Shown here: in pieces, positions 8,622-59,318 of the stretch
Layout of the letters: every line of letters begins with the position of its first letter
Position numbering within the stretch: the stretch's first letter is position 1
Assembly (NCBI RefSeq): GCF_031769215.1
Contig: NW_026781915.1
Location: 1,054,001 to 1,118,000, forward strand
Length of the DNA stretch: 64,000 bases
DNA from: Ylistrum balloti
Lineage: Eukaryota
Direction: 5' to 3'
Position numbers and translations under genes: made by a program
The notes under the pieces: model-generated
Databases searched by the model: none
What the model was told of the DNA's origin: nothing
The model's input: the letters and a program-made list of their open reading frames with translations, nothing else

Positions 8622-8737
8622 GTAGGTATAATGATATAGTAATCATACATAGAGGTAAAGGCATTGTCTTTCTTTTACAGCTTAATTCTGACTATTGTGA
8701 CTGACTGAGGATGTGTGTCTCCAGACACAGGGGTGGT

Positions 8738-11300
8738 ATGGGTTTGACACCTGACACAGCTGACTGGGGTATGGAGTTGATGCCTGACAAAGCTGACTGG
8801 GGTATGGAGTTGATGCCTGACACAGCTGACTTGGGTATGGAGTTGATACCTGACACAGCTGACTGGGGTATGGAGTTGATGCCTGACACAGCTGACTGGG
8901 GTATGGAGTTGATGCCTGACACAGCTGACAGGGGTATGGAGTTGATGCCTGACACAGCTGACTGGGGTATGGGTTTGACACCTGACACAGCTGACTGGGG
9001 TATGGAGTTGATGCCTGACAAAGCTGACTGGGGTATGGAGTTGATGCCTGACACAGCTGACTTGGGTATGGAGTTGATACCTGACACAGCTGACTGGGGT
9101 ATGGAGTTGATGCCTGACACAGCTGACTGGGGTATGGAGTTGATGCCTGACACAGCTGACTGGGGTATGGAGTTGATGCCTGACACAGCTGACTGGGGTA
9201 TGGGTTTGACACCTGACACAGCTGACTGGGGTATGGAGTTGATGCCTGACAAAGCTGACTGGGGTATGGAGTTGATGCCTGACACAGCTGACTTGGGTAT
9301 GGAGTTGAAACCTGACACAGCTGACTGGGGTATGGAGTCTATGCCTGACACAGCTGACTGGGGTATGGAGTTGATGCCTGACACAGCTGACTGGGGTATG
9401 GGTTTGACACCTGACACAGCTGACTGGGGTATGGAGTTGATGCCTGACAAAGCTGACTGGGGTATGGAGTTGATGCCTGACACAGCTGACTTGGGTATGG
9501 AGTTGATACCTGACACAGCTGACTGGGGTATTGAGTTGATGCCTGACACAGCTGACTGTGGTATGGAGTTGACGCCCGACACAGATGACTGGGGTATGGA
9601 GTTGATGCCTGACACAGCTGACTGGGGTATGGAGTTGATGCCTGACACAGCTGACTGGGGTATGGAGTTGATGCCTGACACAGCTTAATGTGGTATGGAG
9701 TTGATGCCTGACACAGCTGACTGGGGTATGGAGTTGATGCCTGACACAGCTGACTGGGGTATGGAGTTGATGCCTGACACAGCTGACTGGGGTATGGAGT
9801 TGATGCCTGACACAGCTGACTGGGGTATGGAGTTGATGCCTGACACAGCTGACTGGGGTATGGAGTTGATGCCTGACACAGCTGACTGGGGTATGGAGTT
9901 GATGCCTGACACAGCTGACTGGGGTATGGAGTTGATGCCTGACACAGCTGACTGGGGTATGGAGTTGATGCCTGACACAGCTGACTGGGGTATGGAGTTG
10001 ATGCCTGACACAGCTGACTGGGGTATGGAGTTGATGCCTGACACAGCTGACTGGGGTATGGAGTTGACGCCCGACACAGATGACTGGGGTATGGAGTTGA
10101 TGCCTGACACAGCTGACTGGGGTATGGAGTTGATGCCTGACACAGCTGACTGGGGTATGGAGTTGATGCCTAACACAGCTGATTGAGGTGAGGAGTTGAT
10201 GCCCGACACAGCTGACTGGGATATGGAGTTGATGCCTGACACAGCTGACTGGGGTATGGAGGTGATGCCTGACACAGCTGACTGGGGTATGGAGTTGATG
10301 CCTGACACAGCTGACTGGGGTATGGAGTTGATGCCTGACACAGCTGACTGGGGTATGGAGTTGATGCCTGACACAGCTGACTGGGGTATGGAGTTGATGC
10401 CTGACACAGCTGACTGGGGTATGGAGTTGATGCCTGACACAGCTGACTGGGGTATGGAGTTGATGCCTGACACAGCTGACTGGGGTATGGAGTTGATGCC
10501 TGACACAGCTGACTGGGGTATGGAGTTGATGCCTGACACAGCTGACTGGGGTATTGAGTTGTTGCCTGAAACAGCTGACTGGGGTATGGAGTTGATGCCT
10601 GACACAGCTGACTGGGGTATGGAGTTGATGCCTAACACAGCTGATTGAGGTGAGGAGTTGATGCCCGACACAGCTGACTGGGATATGGAGTTGATGCCTA
10701 ATACAGGTGACTGGATTATGGAGTTGATGCCTGACACAGATGACTGGGGTATGGAGTTGATGCCTGACACGGCTGACTGAGGTATGGAGTTGATGCCTGA
10801 CACGGCTGACTGAGGTATGGAGTTGATGTCTGATATAGCTGACTGGGTTATGGAGTTGATGCCTGACACAGCTATCTGGGGTGTGGAGTTGATACCTGAC
10901 ACAGCTGACTTGGGTATGGAGTTGATGCCTGACACAGCTGACTGGGGTGTGGAGTTGATGCCTGACACAGCTGACTGGGGTATGGAGGTGATGCCTGACA
11001 CAGCTGACTGGGGTATGGAGTTGATGCCTGACACAGCTGACTGGGGTATGGAGTTGATGCCTGACACAGCTGACTGGGGTATGGAGTTGATGCCTGACAC
11101 AGCTGACTGGGGTATGGAGTTGATGCCTGACACAGCTGACTGGGGTATGGAGTTGATGCCTGACACAGCTGACTGGGGTATGGAGTTGATGCCTGACACA
11201 GCTGACTGGGGTATGGAGTTGATGCCTGACACAGCTGACTGGGGTATGGAGTTGATGCCTGACACAGCTGACTGGGGTATGGAGTTGATGCCTGACATAG
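8738..11300 (+). repeat. 33-bp minisatellite (atggagttgatgcctgacacagctgactggggt), about 78 units, with higher-order structure
   Basis: Very homogeneous tandem array; explains the ORFs 8675..11323, 8692..9681, 8711..9688, 9685..11298 and others. Confidence 0.98.
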
Positions 11301-14059
11301 CTGGAGGAGAGCTTTAAATCCAAAATAGTGTTGTAATGTCTACTGCATCAGCTTAGCTAATGGTTTAATACTTGAGACAGCAGACATATAGGATATGTTG
11401 AGACCATTTAGAAGAAAACAAGTGTCATTAGCTGAAGACATTTGTTTCTTGAGTAAAAAAAACACTAGATTATTGTTCTCTGAAATAATATGGTGGGGTA
11501 ATGAAGCTATTCATGTCTACCGGTATGTGTAGGTCTTGATAATAATCAGAAAGATAAAGAGTTAGTGTTCATTTCAGTCCTATCTGTCTTAACACAGCTG
11601 TTCATGTAGATTATAATCCCATGGAGATTGTAATTAATTTTTTTAATAGAGTTTCTTACTCCCTTTGAGATTTTTGCATTTCAATGTTTATTTATTAACT
11701 TTCCAGGTTAACAGATAATTGAAGTATGTTTACCGAGTTTTGTTGAAATTAAACATTGTGATCTTCTCTCTAAACATTTGAGAAAATATCATGAACACAT
11801 GATAATAGCATCTTGTAACAAAGTTAGGGGGTTTATTGGAATCAGGTTGTATGAGATGGCCCTATAGACAACAGTACTATTTTTCTTTATTATTTTTATA
11901 ATTTTCTTAATTCAGAATAATCACTAGAAGACAAAACCTCCTTAATTTTTTTACCCAGTAAGTAAATACAACATTGTAATTTAAGCGGTGTATAAGTAAC
12001 ATATATTCTAAATTAACATTAAAACACATAAATTACAACACACAGGTGTTGTTAAAAAAAAGTACAACTTAGTTCAATCATTAATTGATATATAAATTAC
12101 ATTGATGATATAATCCTAAGCTGTTCCAAGCTAATACAATATAGCTTGTTAATTACTGGTCCAGAGGCTGAAGCCAACACCTGTAAACAAAAGAATTTCT
12201 ATCAGTCTCTAGTGTGCTACAAAGATAAGCTAACAACATTCCAGACTTCACAATCTTGTTTTTGGTTGGAGTTTAAATAGTTTTTTCACATCTTACATCT
12301 TTGTTATTGTCTAGCAGAAATAGTTGCAAATAACTCACAAACAACGCCTATTGACTGAATTGGAGAAGACTAGTACCACTGTAGGTCTGTGCACAGTCGT
12401 AAAGTGTACAATAAAAAAACGGTTTCAGGGCAGGAATGCTAGAGATGTGGACATTTGAAAGCTTCATTTACACTTCTGAAGTATTTGGAGGAGAATCCTG
12501 ATTTTGGAGTTGTAGGAACTAATGGTTATTAAATGAACACAAATGTCAATTTTTTTGTTGATATCGTAATCCATCAACAACAGGTGCATTATTTGTCTAG
12601 TACAAGCGTACTCTTTGTTTGTATGGAAATCCACTAAGTTTTGAAGTCAGGGGTTGAGTTTGGTTTTGAATTTTTTAACTACATTATTAAATATTAACTT
12701 CTTCAAACAATCTGTTTATGATACTTTAAGTAAATATTTGGTTGCAGGAAAGATAATTTCTCCATCCTTTTAAGTTATTATATCCAATTCTCGTTAATTT
12801 TGATGACAATGAGAAATGATATGATCCTGATAACTTATACAGTTGATAATGATGCTGAGGACTTTGACACTGTTCAGGATGATTTTACCAAACGGATGAC
12901 CTTGACAAACATTGATCATGCTGACTTGAAGGATGTATGAAACTCATATTTGACCAGAAATAGAACTGGACTGTAAACAAATTATATAACTTAATATCAT
13001 ATTGACTTCTGCATTTTGATAGACTTTTTACCATTACTTGTACCCCCCCCCCCACCCGCCCAATCCGCCACCCCTCCCCCTCTTTCCCAGCAGTGGAGCA
13101 CTTAATATGATGTTCTATGGAATTTTTCCTCTGGACTACATTAACCCCACCCCATTTGAGCTAAAATTTTGGTTGGAATGTTAAGGAAAGGCAGTCAAAA
13201 AAAGTGTTGTAAATTTTCAACATGGCAGCCAAGGAGGATATTTTGTAATATGATTGTGCAATCATGGTTTTCCTGTGTGACACCCATTTCAAACTTCTTC
13301 TCAAGTTTCTCCAATGGGATTAAGCTACAGCTCTGATATGATGTGTGTTGATGATAATGACAAAGTTGACATTTTTGACACCTGTTTAAGATGAGGAGTT
13401 TGATATAGTGATATTTGATGTTTTGTTACCATGGTGATCAACTACTTTGTTTATTTGTTTGACATTTTAATGTTGACGTTTTGTATTTTCTTAGTTATTG
13501 AAACTGAAAACAGATATGTGTATATTGTAAAAGGCTTTACTCTCTGAGGGTGGCCTTACCAGTAAGTGGCTCCAAGAATGTTCTAGGGTAGTGATGTATT
13601 ACTTAAGTCCTTGTCATAACTTGTGAATGTATTGTCATAGTAACCTTAGTACAGCAGTATGAAATAGGATTATATTGACTGTAAAACACACCGATCTACC
13701 ACCGATACACAGAAATTTTCGTGGTTTTTACATTGTTTAGTAAGTCAGGTTTAAATAGAAAAGTTGTTATCACAGCGAATTTGTTGATTTGTTTCAAGAT
13801 AACTACAGAAATGTAATGAATTTTACAAAAACATCATAAAAGTAAGCACCAGTAGAACTGCATTTTACCAACATGGTAGATAAGTTATAAACTGTGGTAT
13901 TTCACCCCCTCCCACCCATCCGCCTACCTTGTAAACTTATATTTGTTTACTGCCAACATTGGTTATACATAACTGGGAGAGATTTACCCAGGGGTGACTT
14001 AGGTTAAAGTTTTATTTTTGAAATACTTGAAATATATTTTTAATTCTCTTTTTTTTCAG

Positions 14060-14152
14060 ATCAAACTTGTAAACATTCGATCAGATGAAATTGTTGATGG
14101 CAACCCAAAACTGACGCTTGGTCTCATCTGGACCATCATCCTTCATTTCCAG
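14060..14152 (+). CDS. DST: Spectraplakin exon, end of CH1: [31 protein letters not shown]
   Basis: Acceptor ttttttttcag and donor GTAGGT at 14153; 93 nt, phase 0-0. Contains the near-invariant [30 protein letters not shown] motif (seen inside ORF 14018..14356). Confidence 0.98.
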
Positions 14153-22545: not shown

Positions 22546-24215
22546 TCTTGTTTGTTTGTAATAAAACATAATACTTCGGTGGTTTTATTGCATAGAGAGT
22601 TTGCCAAGATCACAATCATCTTGTCACTCAGTCAGGGTGGGGTAGTGTGTTGACAAGATCTGTAGCTTTCAGGCTTCCCTTAGCTCAATAAAAAATGTGA
22701 GGAGGAGGAGGAGAGAACATCAAGAGATGGAGCTACAGCAGGGAACATTGATAGGAGTCTTTAAGGAGGATCAATGTCATGTTACCAATAACCAGAAGGG
22801 GCCAAGAAGAGTCTGTCGTCTGGGTTCCTGGGATTCTTGAGAGGTGTGGCTCTGTGTTTGCAGAAGTGAAATTTGTGTTTGTAAGACTCACTATCGGTAT
22901 ATAACATAAAAATTTTGTCTCCCATAATAGATAAATAAATAGATTTAGGCAGTGATTCTGAATCTCAATAATACATTATTATAACTAACTGTATGTAATC
23001 ATACAGACCCTATTTTTACTGGAGGGAAATGTCAGTTATTATATGATACTATAACTAGCTGTATGTAATCTATTTCTACTGAAGGGAAATGTAAGTAACT
23101 TAAACGGTTATTATGATACCATTAACATTTATTACTGTGTGATTGTTTATTGCTCAATGCCAGTAGTTAATATCCCCATCTCTCACCAGGTGGCAGGGTT
23201 CGCCCATGATTGGACTAACATGTAAACATTGCCTAAATACTTCTCATCCCAGACTTATATTAAAGGAGGTAGTGATGTTGAAAGGGTTAGTCTTCAGTTC
23301 ACCAAGTTTATCCCCTTTAGCCAAGATGTATGTAGATGTTACAAATCCTCAGACCTTCTAAACCGTGCAAATTATCCCTGCAATATTTCTAATGTTTTGA
23401 TAAGATTATTACCATAGATGTAAGACGGAACTCTGGGTAAATTTTCCTTTTACACTGATACTCATCTTGAGTTCAAATGTTGGCAAACAACTGTATCTTG
23501 ATGTACTGAAAGGAATTATGTTTGTATTTATCAAAGTAATATTTGTTTGTAAAATCCGTTTTTGTATGAGCAGTTATAATGTTACAATGTTTTGAACATG
23601 TGAATTGCAGGCATCATATACGTAATTACTGATGTTGGTCAAAACAATTTTTAAAAAAATCAAAATAAATAAAAATAAAGAAGATCGGCCAGGGATCTTC
23701 AGATATCCCTTTACATTAGGTGATGGTGTCAGTGAGGGCTTGTATAGATGTACAGTTCTCTTGACTTTCACCAGATTGGCTGCCCCTATCAGTGCTTACT
23801 GGTTACTGAACAGACGAGTAGGAAGTGAGGCATGATGCATGCGACTGCTGGGCTGATACCGGTAACAGAAATTGTTATTGGCATGAAGGATACACATACA
23901 GGCAGACAGAGGGGGTATCTCACTGTAGACCCCCCTCATCACTATCAGTCCTCACTCTCCATCAACTCTCTCTCTAATGTGATCTGGCTCTGGGCAGGAG
24001 TGCTGCTCTCTCTATCACTCACCAGATATGTGTTACAACCAAAGTGGATTTATTTCATATCTCCTAACATGTTTTGTGATGTATCATACGACCTTTTAAC
24101 CGTGTGAGAGTGTAGGGTCATTTCATACAGGCATGATTACCACAGAAAAAAGTACATTATTTACAGTAAATCATCTTTATCATAATAATAATATTTAAGA
24201 AACAGTATTTTTTTA

Positions 24216-24385
24216 TGACAATCACTGGAGTGTGTCCTGTGTGTAGTCTATGACAATCACTGGAGTGTGTCCTGTGTGTAGTCTATGACAATCACTGGAG
24301 TGTGTCTTGTGTATAGTCTATGACAATCACTGGATCGTGTCCTGTGTGTAGTCTATGACAATCACTAAAGTGTGTCCTGTGCGGA
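24216..24385. repeat. 35-bp minisatellite (atgacaatcactggagtgtgtcctgtgtgtagtct), about 5 units
   Basis: Direct tandem repeats. Confidence 0.9.
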
Positions 24386-24416
24386 GTCTTTAGGATAAGT
24401 TGTATGATGATGATAT

Positions 24417-24560
24417 ATGTTGTATTGTGAGGAATTCTTGTTGCCATTGTTCCATTTCTTTATTACCTTGGGATATTTCCTGATTCTAATGGAGAAGAAA
24501 CGATTCCCATTTAAACTTGGCTTTGGCCAGAAAAAAGTGAAATCACCTTTAAAGAAGCAG
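24417..24560 (+). CDS. Putative alternative first coding exon of the spectraplakin (48 aa, hydrophobic segment plus polybasic tail; a second in-frame ATG at 24489 gives 24 aa)
   Basis: ATG-initiated open frame ending in a strong CAG|GTAAGA donor in phase 0, compatible with the acceptor at 59152. Peptide MLYCEEFLLPLFHFFITLGYFLILMEKKRFPFKLGFGQKKVKSPLKKQ. Prediction only. Confidence 0.6.
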
Positions 24561-24587
24561 GTAAGAAGTTACTACAGTACTCTTATA

Positions 24588-25575
24588 GTAAATGTACTAT
24601 GTTGTAGTACGTGAACGATGGTAAATGTACTACGTTGTAGTACGTGAACAATGGTAAATGTACTATGTTGTAGTACGTGAACGATGGTAAATGTACTACT
24701 TTGTAATACGTGAACAATGGTAAATGTACTACTTTGTAATACGTGAACAATGATAAATGTACTACTTTGTAGTATGTGAACGATGGTAAATGTACTACGT
24801 TGTAGTACGTGAACAATGGTAAATGTAGTACGTGAACGATGGTAAATGTACTACTTTGTAGTACGTGAACAATGGTAAATGTACTACTTTGTAGTACGTG
24901 AACAATGGTAAATGTACTACTTTGTAGTACGTGAACGATGGTAAATGTACTACGTTGTAGTACGTGAACAATGGTAAATGTACTACTTTGTAGTATGTGA
25001 CACTACTTTGTAGTACGTGAGCAATGGTAAATGTACTACATTGTAGTATGTGAATGATGGTAAATGTACAACTTTGTAGTATGTGACACTACTTTGTAGT
25101 ACGTGAGCAATGGTAAATGTAGTACGTGAACGATGGTAAATGTACTACTTTGTAGTACGTGAACAATGGTAAATGTAGTACGTGAACGATGGTAAATGTA
25201 CTACTTTGTAGTACGTGAACGATGGTAAATGTACTACTTTGTAGTACGTGAACAATGGTAAATGTACTACTTTGTAGTACGTGAACAATTGTAATTGTAC
25301 TAAGTTGTAGTATGTGAACGAGGGTAAATGTACTACTTTGTAGTATGTGACACTACTTTGTAGTACGTGAGCAATGGTAAATGTACTACATTGTAGTATG
25401 TGAATGATGGTAAATGTACAACTTTGTAGTACGTGAACGATGGTAAATGTACTACGTTGTAGTACGTGAACGATGGTAAATGTACTACTTTGTAGTACGT
25501 GAACAATTGTAATTGTACTAAGTTGTAGTATGTGAACGAGGGTAAATGTACTACTTTGTAGTATGTGAATAACAA
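24588..25575. repeat. 33-bp minisatellite (gtaaatgtactac[g/t]ttgtagtacgtgaacgatg) with an internal 7-bp inverted repeat
   Basis: Tandem 33-mers with deletion variants; source of the minus-strand FTYYKVVHLPS ORFs. Confidence 0.95.
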
Positions 25576-37658: not shown

Positions 37659-38027
37659 ATGATCAAGTGGACATGGAATTTATTAGAAAAAGCCAGAAGT
37701 ACTCCAGACATTTCCTCACACAATGGCCACTTTCTGGCTCCAGAACAACGGAGTTACTTCCCCTGGAGGCGTTTGTCCCCTTCTCCACTGCCGGTCCTCA
37801 GGGTAGTGCGCCCCTGTCTTAGATGTGGTTGTTACTATTCTTGTATGTGCGGCTTGTCTCCATGGCTAAAGACCAGACGGCCATCTTTACAGGAAGCTGT
37901 CCGCGGACTATTACTTCCTGACACCCTCACAGTGCGTCGGTGGTCTTTCCAAAACACCATCAGGAAGTTGTCTGAACCTAATGTCGTAAGAAGATATTCG
38001 CTTCCAACAAATATTGAAAATTATGTG
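37659..38027 (+). CDS. Putative alternative first coding exon (123 aa, Cys cluster, five R-R/K-x-S motifs)
   Basis: First 123 codons of non-repetitive ORF 37659..38150, locally more GC-rich. Phase-0 donor GTG|GTAAAA at 38028 (moderate strength), after which the sequence reverts to AT-rich intron-like DNA. Confidence 0.65.
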
Positions 38028-49647: not shown

Positions 49648-49749
49648 ATGTTTGGATGTTTCGGAAAGAAGAAAAAAAAGTTAAAGGGGAAAGCCCCACT
49701 TGACAGTAGAAGGGATGTTTGTAGTAATGAAGAGCAACCGGATCAACAG
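49648..49749 (+). CDS. Putative alternative first coding exon (34 aa): MFGCFGKKKKKLKGKAPLDSRRDVCSNEEQPDQQ
   Basis: ATG in good context (cgccATG), open frame to a strong CAG|GTATGA phase-0 donor, and a motif-like peptide. Too short for the ORF track. Confidence 0.65.
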
Positions 49750-50700
49750 GTATGATATTGCTAGGTGGGTTGGTACTACAGGTGGAATATTGTATAATGG
49801 GTTGGTGCTACAGCTATGATATTGTGTGATGGGTTGGTGCTACAGGTATTATATTGTGTGATGGGTCGGTGCTACAGGTATGATATTGTGTGATGGGTCG
49901 GTGCTACAGGTATGATATTGTATAATGGGTCGGTGCTACAGCTATGATATTATGTGATGGGTTGGTGCTACAACTATGATATTGTGTGATGGGTTGGTGC
50001 TACAGCTATGATATTGTGTGATGGGTTGGTGCTACAGCTATGATATTGTGTGATAAGTCGGTGCTACAGCTTTGATATTGTGTGATGGGTTGGTGCTACA
50101 GCTATGATATTGTGTGATGGGTTGGTGCTACAGGTATGATATTGTGTGATGGGTTGGTGCTAAAGGTATGATATTGTGTGATGGGTCGGTGCTACAGCTA
50201 TGATATTACAGGTATGATATTGTGTGATAAGTCGGTGCTACAGCATTGATATTGTGTGATAAGTCGGTGCTACAGCTTTGATATTGTGTGATGGGTTGGT
50301 GCTACAGCTATGATATTGTGTGATGGGTTGGTGCTACAGGTATGATATTGTGTGATGGGTTGGTGCTAAAGGTATGATATTGTGTGATGGGTCGGTGCTA
50401 CAGGTATGATATTACAGGTATGATATTGTGTGATAAGTCGGTGCTACAGCTTTGATATTGTGTGATTGTGTGATGGGTTGGTGCTACAGGTATGATATTG
50501 TATGATGGGTTGGCGCTACAGGTATGATATTGTATGATGGGTCGGTGCTACAGCTATGATATTGTGTGATGGGTTGGTGCTACAGCTATGATATTGTGTG
50601 ATGGGTCAGTGCTACAGGTATGATATTGTATGATGGGTCGGTGCTGCAGGTATGATATTGTATAATGGGTTGGTGCTACAGCTATGATATTGTGATATGA
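49747..50700. repeat. 32-bp minisatellite (caggtatgatattgtgtgatgggttggtgcta)
   Basis: About 30 units, starting exactly at the donor of candidate exon 49648-49749. Confidence 0.96.
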
Positions 50701-59151: not shown

Positions 59152-59318
59152 GTGTCAGACGTTGTCGTCCCTGGACAACCTGAAGACATCACAGCCAAAG
59201 AAGCCTTGTTGCTATGGAGTCGACGAACAGTGGAAGGCTACCCTGGGGTCAAGATCAACAACTTCAGCAAAAGTTGGAGGGACGGACGTGCATTCCTATC
59301 CATTATACACAGACACAG
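59152..59318 (+). CDS. DST: Spectraplakin exon, linker plus first half of CH2: VSDVVVPGQPEDITAKEALLLWSRRTVEGYPGVKINNFSKSWRDGRAFLSIIHRH(R)
   Basis: Acceptor ccctgtgttgtag and donor GTCAGT at 59319; 167 nt, phase 0-2. Shows the CH2 motifs TAKExLLLW and NFxxSWRDGxAF; continues exon 14060-14152 in frame. Confidence 0.96.

What the first reader, a model, noticed from the sequence alone, without database searches (positions are those of the whole stretch)
24417..24560. Signal-anchor plus polybasic leader: candidate membrane-anchored CH1-less isoform
Seen: residues 7-25 (FLLPLFHFFITLGYFLILM) form a roughly 19-aa hydrophobic stretch, preceded by EE and followed by KKR...KKVKSPLKK, ending in a consensus CAG|GTAAGA donor. 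Known: the positive-inside rule predicts a cytosolic C-terminus, and dystonin-a2 uses an N-terminal TM leader. Inference: a TM-anchored plakin. The in-frame ATG at 24489 would give a soluble, purely basic/aromatic leader from the same exon, allowing two localisations by start-codon choice.
Basis: partly seen in the sequence, partly recalled or inferred. Interest (0 to 1): 0.8.

Follow-up and report, generated by a model that had tools for sequence, protein, structure and literature searches.

The report
Unsupported hydrophobic start exon, plakin intron
A 48-codon open frame with a greasy stretch, a lysine-rich tail and a good splice-donor look-alike really sits in the big intron of a giant cytoskeletal-linker gene, but nothing shows it is ever used, and its start codon is badly placed, so it is most likely a chance frame.

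Summary
An ATG-initiated 48-codon frame (24417-24560) has a 19-residue hydrophobic stretch, acidic before and strongly basic after. It ends on CAG|GTAAGA in phase with the CH2 exon at 59152. The gene context is also right: a plakin-type actin-binding domain, with the last CH1 exon at 14060-14152 and the first CH2 exon at 59152-59318.

No test gave positive evidence that the frame is an exon:
- No RNA run is served for this organism. The one holder is a DNA-like contig that runs unspliced through the donor.
- Two word searches and one search of 1.84 billion representative proteins found no relative.
- Equivalent ORF-plus-donor configurations occur by chance on the antisense strand, at about 0.1-0.4 expected per strand and phase.
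- The ATG has a poor context (T at -3, T at +4). It is overlapped by an out-of-frame upstream ORF whose ATGs have better context.
- The predicted membrane-insertion energy is borderline (about 0 kcal/mol).
- The frame lies in 198 bp of unique DNA between two minisatellites.
- A different leader exon 13 kb downstream (37659-38027) is demonstrably conserved; an earlier follow-up in this scan had already reported that.

My estimates: chance frame about 0.6; real exon of any kind about 0.3; membrane-anchored isoform about 0.12.

The parts
24417..24560 (+). 48-codon ATG-initiated open frame (the finding)
   Evidence: in-frame TGA at 24411; unique within the window; no Pfam family; no relatives
24435..24491 (+). 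19-residue hydrophobic stretch (residues 7-25), Phe/Leu-rich, with one Pro and one His
   Evidence: Kyte-Doolittle mean 2.13; sum on the Hessa biological scale about 0.03 kcal/mol (scale values from memory), which is borderline
24492..24560 (+). basic tail (net +8 over 23 residues)
24561..24566 (+). donor look-alike CAG|GTAAGA, phase 0
   Evidence: simple PWM score 7.08 bits, higher than the donors of the accepted exons in the window (-0.15 to 6.83)
24404..24430 (+). out-of-frame upstream ORF (ATGs at 24404, 24407, 24410; stop ends at 24430) that overlaps ATG 24417
   Evidence: two of its ATGs have A at -3, whereas ATG 24417 has T at -3 and T at +4
24489..24491 (+). in-frame internal ATG (Met25), context C at -3 and G at +4; next ATG after 24417
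24214..24389 (.). 35-bp x 5 minisatellite directly upstream; each unit carries an ATG...TGA mini-ORF
24588..25569 (.). 33-bp minisatellite (about 24 units) starting 28 nt after the donor
14060..14152 (+). last CH1 exon of the plakin-type gene, ends ...HFQ with CAG|GTAGGT, phase 0
59152..59318 (+). first CH2 exon, the proposed splice target
   Evidence: Pfam CH PF00307 E 1.3e-9; best solved relatives are plectin and MACF1 actin-binding domains, residues about 110-164
37659..38027 (+). rival, conserved 123-codon leader exon in the same intron
   Evidence: P0001 79% identical, E 7e-55; genomic contig L001 keeps the exon, ATG and donor while the flanks are diverged to noise
49648..49749 (+). third candidate leader (Cys plus polylysine), not tested for conservation
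   Evidence: start context G at -3; donor CAG|GTATGA scores 4.4

Best explanation
The 48-codon frame is most likely a fortuitous open frame. It lies in a 198-bp island of unique intronic DNA between two minisatellites, inside the 45-kb CH1-CH2 intron of a mollusc (reportedly scallop) spectraplakin-type gene. A T-rich tract read with T at the second codon position gives the Phe/Leu-rich 'membrane' stretch. The following A-rich tract gives the lysines. A donor-like CAG|GTAAGA happens to lie in phase. On this reading it is not a used exon and no membrane-anchored isoform is made. CH1-less isoforms of this gene would start instead from the conserved 123-codon leader at 37659, and possibly from the one at 49648. 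What is shown: the sequence features, the lack of relatives, the chance controls and the unfavourable start context. What is inferred: the absence of use.
For: Equivalent ATG-ORF plus donor configurations occur in unique DNA in control sets: 2 cases of 48 codons or more at donor score 5 or more, across five strand/phase sets of 64 kb. That gives about 0.3-0.4 expected per set. Local shuffles times the number of donor-like sites give about 0.04-0.07. There is no relative among proteins of 26-84 aa or 36-115 aa, nor among 1.84 billion representatives of any length. The single hit there, P0002, is a spurious repeat protein. The same database does hold the orthologue of the neighbouring 123-codon leader. 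ATG 24417 has T at -3 and T at +4. It is overlapped by an upstream ORF (24404-24430) whose ATGs have A at -3, and five more mini-ORFs lie in the 200 nt upstream. The conserved leader has A at -3 and the 49648 leader has G at -3. The insertion energy is borderline, with a Pro and a His in the stretch. No TATA or Inr of note was found. In the one other individual or assembly seen, the ORF carries one replacement (Tyr3 to Asn) and one silent change, while the 170 flanking bases carry none. So it is not visibly more constrained than its flanks.
Against: The donor is the best-scoring of all exon donors in the window, on the right strand and in the right phase. On the sense strand in phase 0 it is the only such ORF within the intron. 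A 19-residue stretch this hydrophobic is found in only 5 of 281 open segments. The acidic-before, basic-after arrangement is what a type III signal anchor needs. Spectraplakin genes are known to carry several alternative first exons here, some of them membrane-targeting (PMC3352950). The negative searches have low power. Only one related genome fragment is in the database even for the conserved leader. The ORF of this species' own X1 contig is not in the database either. Giant annotated isoforms collapse into one representative. No RNA data exist to show silence.
Confidence: 0.6

Rival explanations
1. One reading: a real alternative first exon. Its product starts at ATG 24417. The hydrophobic stretch acts as an N-out/C-in signal anchor. 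This tethers a CH1-less spectraplakin, facing the cytosol, to ER or perinuclear membranes, functionally like dystonin-a2.
For: ORF, phase and a strong donor. Kyte-Doolittle mean 2.13 over 19 aa with flank charges -2 and +8. Such stretches are rare in random open frames. The precedent of a transmembrane leader in dystonin-a2 (PMC3279385; PMC3352950).
Against: No transcript and no relatives. Poor start context and an overlapping upstream ORF. The Hessa-scale sum is only about 0, with Pro and His in the stretch. No sequence similarity to any dystonin leader in the library search. Dystonin-a2 keeps CH1, whereas CH1-less vertebrate isoforms use lipidation motifs instead.
Confidence: 0.12
2. A real, young (lineage-specific) first exon that splices to CH2, but translated mainly from ATG 24489 after leaky scanning or reinitiation behind the upstream ORF. 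This would give a soluble 24-residue polybasic leader on a CH1-less isoform. The hydrophobic part would rarely or never be made.
For: Same exon signals as above. ATG 24417 is weak and overlapped by the 24404-24430 upstream ORF. There is no ATG between 24417 and 24489. ATG 24489 has G at +4. Basic leaders recur in this intron: the 123-codon leader is basic and the 49648 leader is polylysine.
Against: No transcript and no relatives. The chance expectation is not negligible.
Confidence: 0.13
3. The donor is used only occasionally, as part of a non-productive (cryptic or poison) exon or a non-coding first exon. This would yield transcripts without a functional new N-terminus.
For: A strong donor in a very long intron. 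In-frame stops lie just upstream (TGA at 24411), so any exon entered from an upstream acceptor would be interrupted.
Against: No convincing acceptor with a pyrimidine tract upstream of 24417. No RNA data.
Confidence: 0.08

Closest known systems
Dystonin-a2 / BPAG1a2 N-terminal transmembrane leader (mouse, human)
   Same: An alternative first exon of a spectraplakin gene would put a hydrophobic membrane anchor at the extreme N-terminus, with the giant protein on the cytosolic side (PMC3279385, PMC3352950).
   Different: In dystonin-a2 the leader precedes a complete CH1+CH2 domain, is highly conserved and is experimentally localised. Here the frame would skip CH1, has no detectable relative, has borderline hydrophobicity and has no transcript evidence.
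CH1-less isoforms: MACF1a3, BPAG1a3/n3, Drosophila Shot C
   Same: A start exon between the CH1 and CH2 exons that splices in phase 0 to the first CH2 exon. Vertebrate isoform 3 carries a membrane-targeting (myristoylation) motif (PMC3352950; PMC3279385).
   Different: Those exons are supported by cDNA and conservation. In this window that role is better filled by the conserved 123-codon leader at 37659, and perhaps by the Cys-polylysine leader at 49648.
Chance ORFs in T-rich and A-rich intronic DNA
   Same: T at 46% of second codon positions gives Phe/Leu/Ile. The A-rich tail gives Lys. The start context is poor, many upstream ATGs are present, and the frame is flanked by minisatellites.
   Different: The coincidence of a long open frame with the strongest donor-like site in the right phase is uncommon.

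Membership tests
Plakin / spectraplakin gene (host gene) | Tandem CH1-CH2 calponin-homology actin-binding domain of plakin type | tested here: met
   CH2 exon: Pfam PF00307 E 1.3e-9. Best solved relatives are plectin (E 2e-20) and MACF1 (E 1e-14), ahead of spectrin and actinin. CH1 exons were read at about 7.75-7.86 kb, about 8.54-8.62 kb and 14060-14152. The rest of the gene lies outside the window.
Alternative first exon of a CH1-less spectraplakin isoform (MACF1a3 / BPAG1a3 / Shot C type) | Lies between the last CH1 exon and the first CH2 exon, on the gene strand | tested here: met
   24417-24560 lies in the intron 14153-59151, + strand.
Alternative first exon of a CH1-less spectraplakin isoform (MACF1a3 / BPAG1a3 / Shot C type) | ATG-initiated frame ending on a donor in the phase of the CH2 exon | tested here: met
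   48 whole codons; CAG|GTAAGA; phase 0 on both sides.
Alternative first exon of a CH1-less spectraplakin isoform (MACF1a3 / BPAG1a3 / Shot C type) | Transcript with the junction 24560^59152 and a start site upstream of the ATG | not testable with these tools
   No RNA run is served for this organism. The one run (X1) is a DNA-like contig collinear through the donor.
Alternative first exon of a CH1-less spectraplakin isoform (MACF1a3 / BPAG1a3 / Shot C type) | Conservation of frame, ATG and donor in related species | tested here: inconclusive
   No relative in three protein searches, whereas the neighbouring 123-codon leader has one. Database coverage of related genomes is thin, so a blank carries little weight.
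N-terminal signal-anchor leader as in dystonin-a2 | Hydrophobic segment long and hydrophobic enough to integrate into the membrane | tested here: inconclusive
   19 aa, Kyte-Doolittle mean 2.13. The Hessa-scale sum is about 0.03 kcal/mol, roughly an even chance of insertion, with Pro and His inside (scale values from memory). DeepTMHMM and SignalP were not available.
N-terminal signal-anchor leader as in dystonin-a2 | Positive-inside charge distribution that keeps the C-terminal bulk in the cytosol | tested here: met
   Flank charges are -2 (N side) and +8 (C side).
N-terminal signal-anchor leader as in dystonin-a2 | Sequence relatedness to the dystonin-a2 leader, and position upstream of a full CH1+CH2 domain | tested here: not met
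   No dystonin or any plakin among hits in 1.84 billion representatives. Here the exon would bypass CH1.

The most novel reading that the evidence does not exclude
A lineage-specific first exon, born in unique DNA between two minisatellites, gives a mollusc spectraplakin a CH1-less isoform anchored in ER or perinuclear membranes by an N-terminal type III signal anchor. A second start codon (24489), favoured by an overlapping upstream ORF, yields a soluble polybasic form. This would be an independent, convergent invention of the dystonin-a2 principle, with localisation set by start-codon choice.
Probability: 0.1. Interest if true: 0.45.

Novelty: not a real feature. Interest (0 to 1): 0.15.

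Why it matters
If real, it would show that membrane anchoring of giant cytoskeletal linkers arose more than once. It would also be a case of a new coding first exon arising next to minisatellites, with a built-in switch between membrane-bound and soluble forms. As it stands, it is a warning that T-rich/A-rich intronic DNA beside a donor-like site can mimic a 'signal anchor plus polybasic' leader. The CH1-less isoform of this gene is better explained by the conserved leader at 37659.

Tried and rejected
- **RNA evidence.** The look-up of sequencing runs gave no RNA run. It gave only X1, whose 341-nt contig is collinear with the genome across the donor, so it is DNA-like.
- **Word search with the 48 aa.** Candidates of 26-84 aa: nothing.
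- **Word search with the 66-aa read-through frame.** Scored on residues 1-48, candidates of 36-115 aa: nothing.
- **Full library search.** The only hit was P0002, a 432-aa repeat protein whose four repeats each weakly resemble the basic tail. I rejected it as spurious.
- **Is the donor a decayed first unit of the 33-bp minisatellite?** The alignment score is 13-14 against a null 95th percentile of 15, so this is not supported.
- **Is the ORF segment a repeated element?** There is no second copy in the window. Genome-wide copy number was not testable.
- **Cassette exon?** No acceptor with a pyrimidine tract of 70% or more lies upstream.
- **Core promoter motifs.** One weak TATA-like site at 24192 and no Inr near the ORF.
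- **Pfam on the ORF and on the neighbouring 91-aa ORF.** Nothing.
- **Not attempted.** Giant annotated isoforms therefore could not be queried for this N-terminus.

Full report
**Observation**

- An ATG follows an in-frame TGA at 24411. Then come 48 codons without a stop, and the last codon CAG is followed by GTAAGA.
- Residues 7-25 are a Phe/Leu-rich hydrophobic stretch (Kyte-Doolittle mean 2.13 over 19 residues).
- The six residues before it carry net charge -2, and the 23 after it carry +8.
- A second in-frame ATG lies at 24489, with no other ATG in between.
- The frame is 144 nt, so its donor is in phase 0.

**Gene context**

- The window carries CH1 exons of a plakin-type gene on the + strand. 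They lie at about 7.75-7.86 kb, about 8.54-8.62 kb and 14060-14152. The last one ends ...HFQ with CAG|GTAGGT.
- The exon at 59152-59318 is the start of CH2. It matches Pfam CH (E 1.3e-9). Its best solved relatives are plectin and MACF1 actin-binding domains at residues about 110-164, ahead of spectrins and actinins.
- Both boundaries are phase 0, so an ORF ending at 24560 could join 59152 in frame.
I did not verify that.
- The intron 14153-59151 is where CH1-less isoforms of MACF1, BPAG1 and Shot start (PMC3352950).

**Local anatomy**

- The ORF sits in a 198-bp island of unique DNA. A 35-bp x 5 minisatellite (24214-24389) lies upstream, and a 33-bp array of about 24 units (24588-25569) lies downstream.
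- The island has no second copy in the window and no Pfam match.
- The donor is not demonstrably a decayed unit of the downstream array.
- No acceptor with a good pyrimidine tract lies upstream, so it is not an obvious cassette exon. No convincing core-promoter motifs were seen.

**Is it more than chance?**

- With a simple donor matrix, the site scores 7.08 bits. The accepted exons in the window score -0.15 to 6.83.
- On the + strand in phase 0, it is the only ATG-ORF of 10 codons or more that ends on a donor-like site scoring 5 or more within the intron.
- Dinucleotide shuffles of the 171 nt before the donor give an ATG-ORF of 48 codons or more in 0.3% of trials, and 30 codons or more in 2%.
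- There are 13 distinct sites scoring 6 or more, and 22 scoring 5 or more, on this strand.
- The five control sets (other phases, antisense strand) contain comparable cases in unique DNA. Examples are 49177-49032 (48 codons, donor 6.3) and 30775-30537 (79 codons, donor 5.1).
- The expected number of such coincidences per strand and phase is therefore about 0.05-0.4. That is marginal.
- The hydrophobic stretch is rarer: 0.1% of open 19-mers and 5 of 281 open segments of 48 aa or more. It was noticed after the fact.
- It also follows from composition. T is 46% of second codon positions. The first half of the frame is 65% pyrimidine, the second half is 61% purine, and skewed tracts of both kinds are poor in stop codons.

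**Expression**

It listed only X1, of unknown kind.
- Laid on 23700-24590, X1 gives a 341-nt contig that is collinear with the genome from 24277 across the donor to beyond 24590. It is therefore unspliced and DNA-like.
- That contig has two differences from the window: 24423 T>A (Tyr3 to Asn) and 24467 C>T (silent). The 170 flanking bases have none.
- The junction 24560^59152 and the transcription start could therefore not be tested.

**Relatives**

- Word search with the 48 residues (candidates of 26-84 aa): no candidate.
- Word search with the 66-residue read-through frame, scored on residues 1-48 (candidates of 36-115 aa): none.
- phmmer against 1.84 billion cluster representatives of any length gave one hit. 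P0002 (E 5e-4) is a 432-aa repeat protein whose four repeats each weakly resemble the basic tail. It is not a plakin.
- By contrast, the 123-codon leader at 37659-38027 finds P0001 (79% identity, E 7e-55) on a genomic Logan contig, L001. In that contig the exon, its ATG and its TG|GTAAA donor are kept, while the flanks are diverged to noise. I thus confirm the earlier follow-up on that exon.
- The contrast counts against the 24417 frame, but weakly.
  - Even the conserved leader has only one relative in the database.
  - The ORF on this species' own X1 contig is not in the database.
  - The many isoforms of a giant protein collapse into one representative.

**Start-codon setting**

- ATG 24417 has T at -3 and T at +4. 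The conserved leader has A at -3, and the 49648 leader has G at -3.
- Three out-of-frame ATGs at 24404, 24407 and 24410 open an upstream ORF that ends at 24430, on top of ATG 24417. Two of them have A at -3.
- Each unit of the upstream minisatellite adds another 12-codon mini-ORF.
- Unless transcription starts within the six bases 24411-24416, scanning ribosomes would meet better ATGs first.
- After the upstream ORF, the next ATG is 24489. So even if the exon is real, the hydrophobic part would be translated poorly, and the soluble basic leader would be favoured. This is inference from the scanning model.

**Membrane-anchor reading**

- The position-independent Hessa scale (values from memory) sums to about 0.03 kcal/mol over the 19 residues, which is roughly an even chance of insertion. 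One Pro and one His lie in the stretch.
- Dystonin-a2's transmembrane leader and dystonin-a3's myristoylation motif are documented (PMC3279385; PMC3352950).
- The transmembrane leader there precedes a full CH1+CH2 domain, however. No sequence similarity to it was found.

**Verdict**

- My estimates:

| Reading | Estimate |
|---|---|
| Chance frame that is not used | about 0.6 |
| Real first exon translated mainly from 24489 | about 0.13 |
| Real membrane-anchored CH1-less isoform | about 0.12 |
| Occasional non-productive use of the donor | about 0.08 |

- If real, it would be a new variant of a known principle (alternative spectraplakin leaders that set localisation), not a new kind of system.

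Noticed in passing
window 49648-49900: The donor of the third candidate leader (Cys plus polylysine, CAG|GTATGATATT at 49749/49750) is the first unit of a minisatellite of about 31 bp. The array repeats 'ctacag gtatgatattgtg...' at least four times, so donor-like sites recur every ~31 nt downstream of that exon.
   Followed up: no
window 37659-38027; L001:443-826: The 123-codon basic, Cys-rich leader is conserved in a related genome (P0001, 79% identity). Its ATG and TG|GTAAA donor are kept, while the flanking DNA is diverged to noise. This is an independent confirmation of the earlier follow-up.
   Followed up: yes
window 8675-11323: A 2.6-kb minisatellite lies inside an intron of the CH1-coding part of the gene. 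It is open in several frames on both strands and gives an artefactual 882-aa 'ORF'. The whole window is unusually rich in minisatellites (17.6-18.2, 20.7-22.5, 36.1-36.7, 38.6-39.5, 45.5-46.2, 55.9-56.6 kb).
   Followed up: no
window 24423 and 24467: The one other public data set of this organism (X1) differs at two places inside the ORF: T>A (Tyr3 to Asn) and C>T (silent). It shows no differences in the 170 flanking bases covered.
   Followed up: partly
window 49177-49032 and 30775-30537, minus strand: Antisense ATG-ORFs of 48 and 79 codons end on donor-like sites in unique DNA. I used them as chance controls and did not examine them as possible antisense exons.
   Followed up: no
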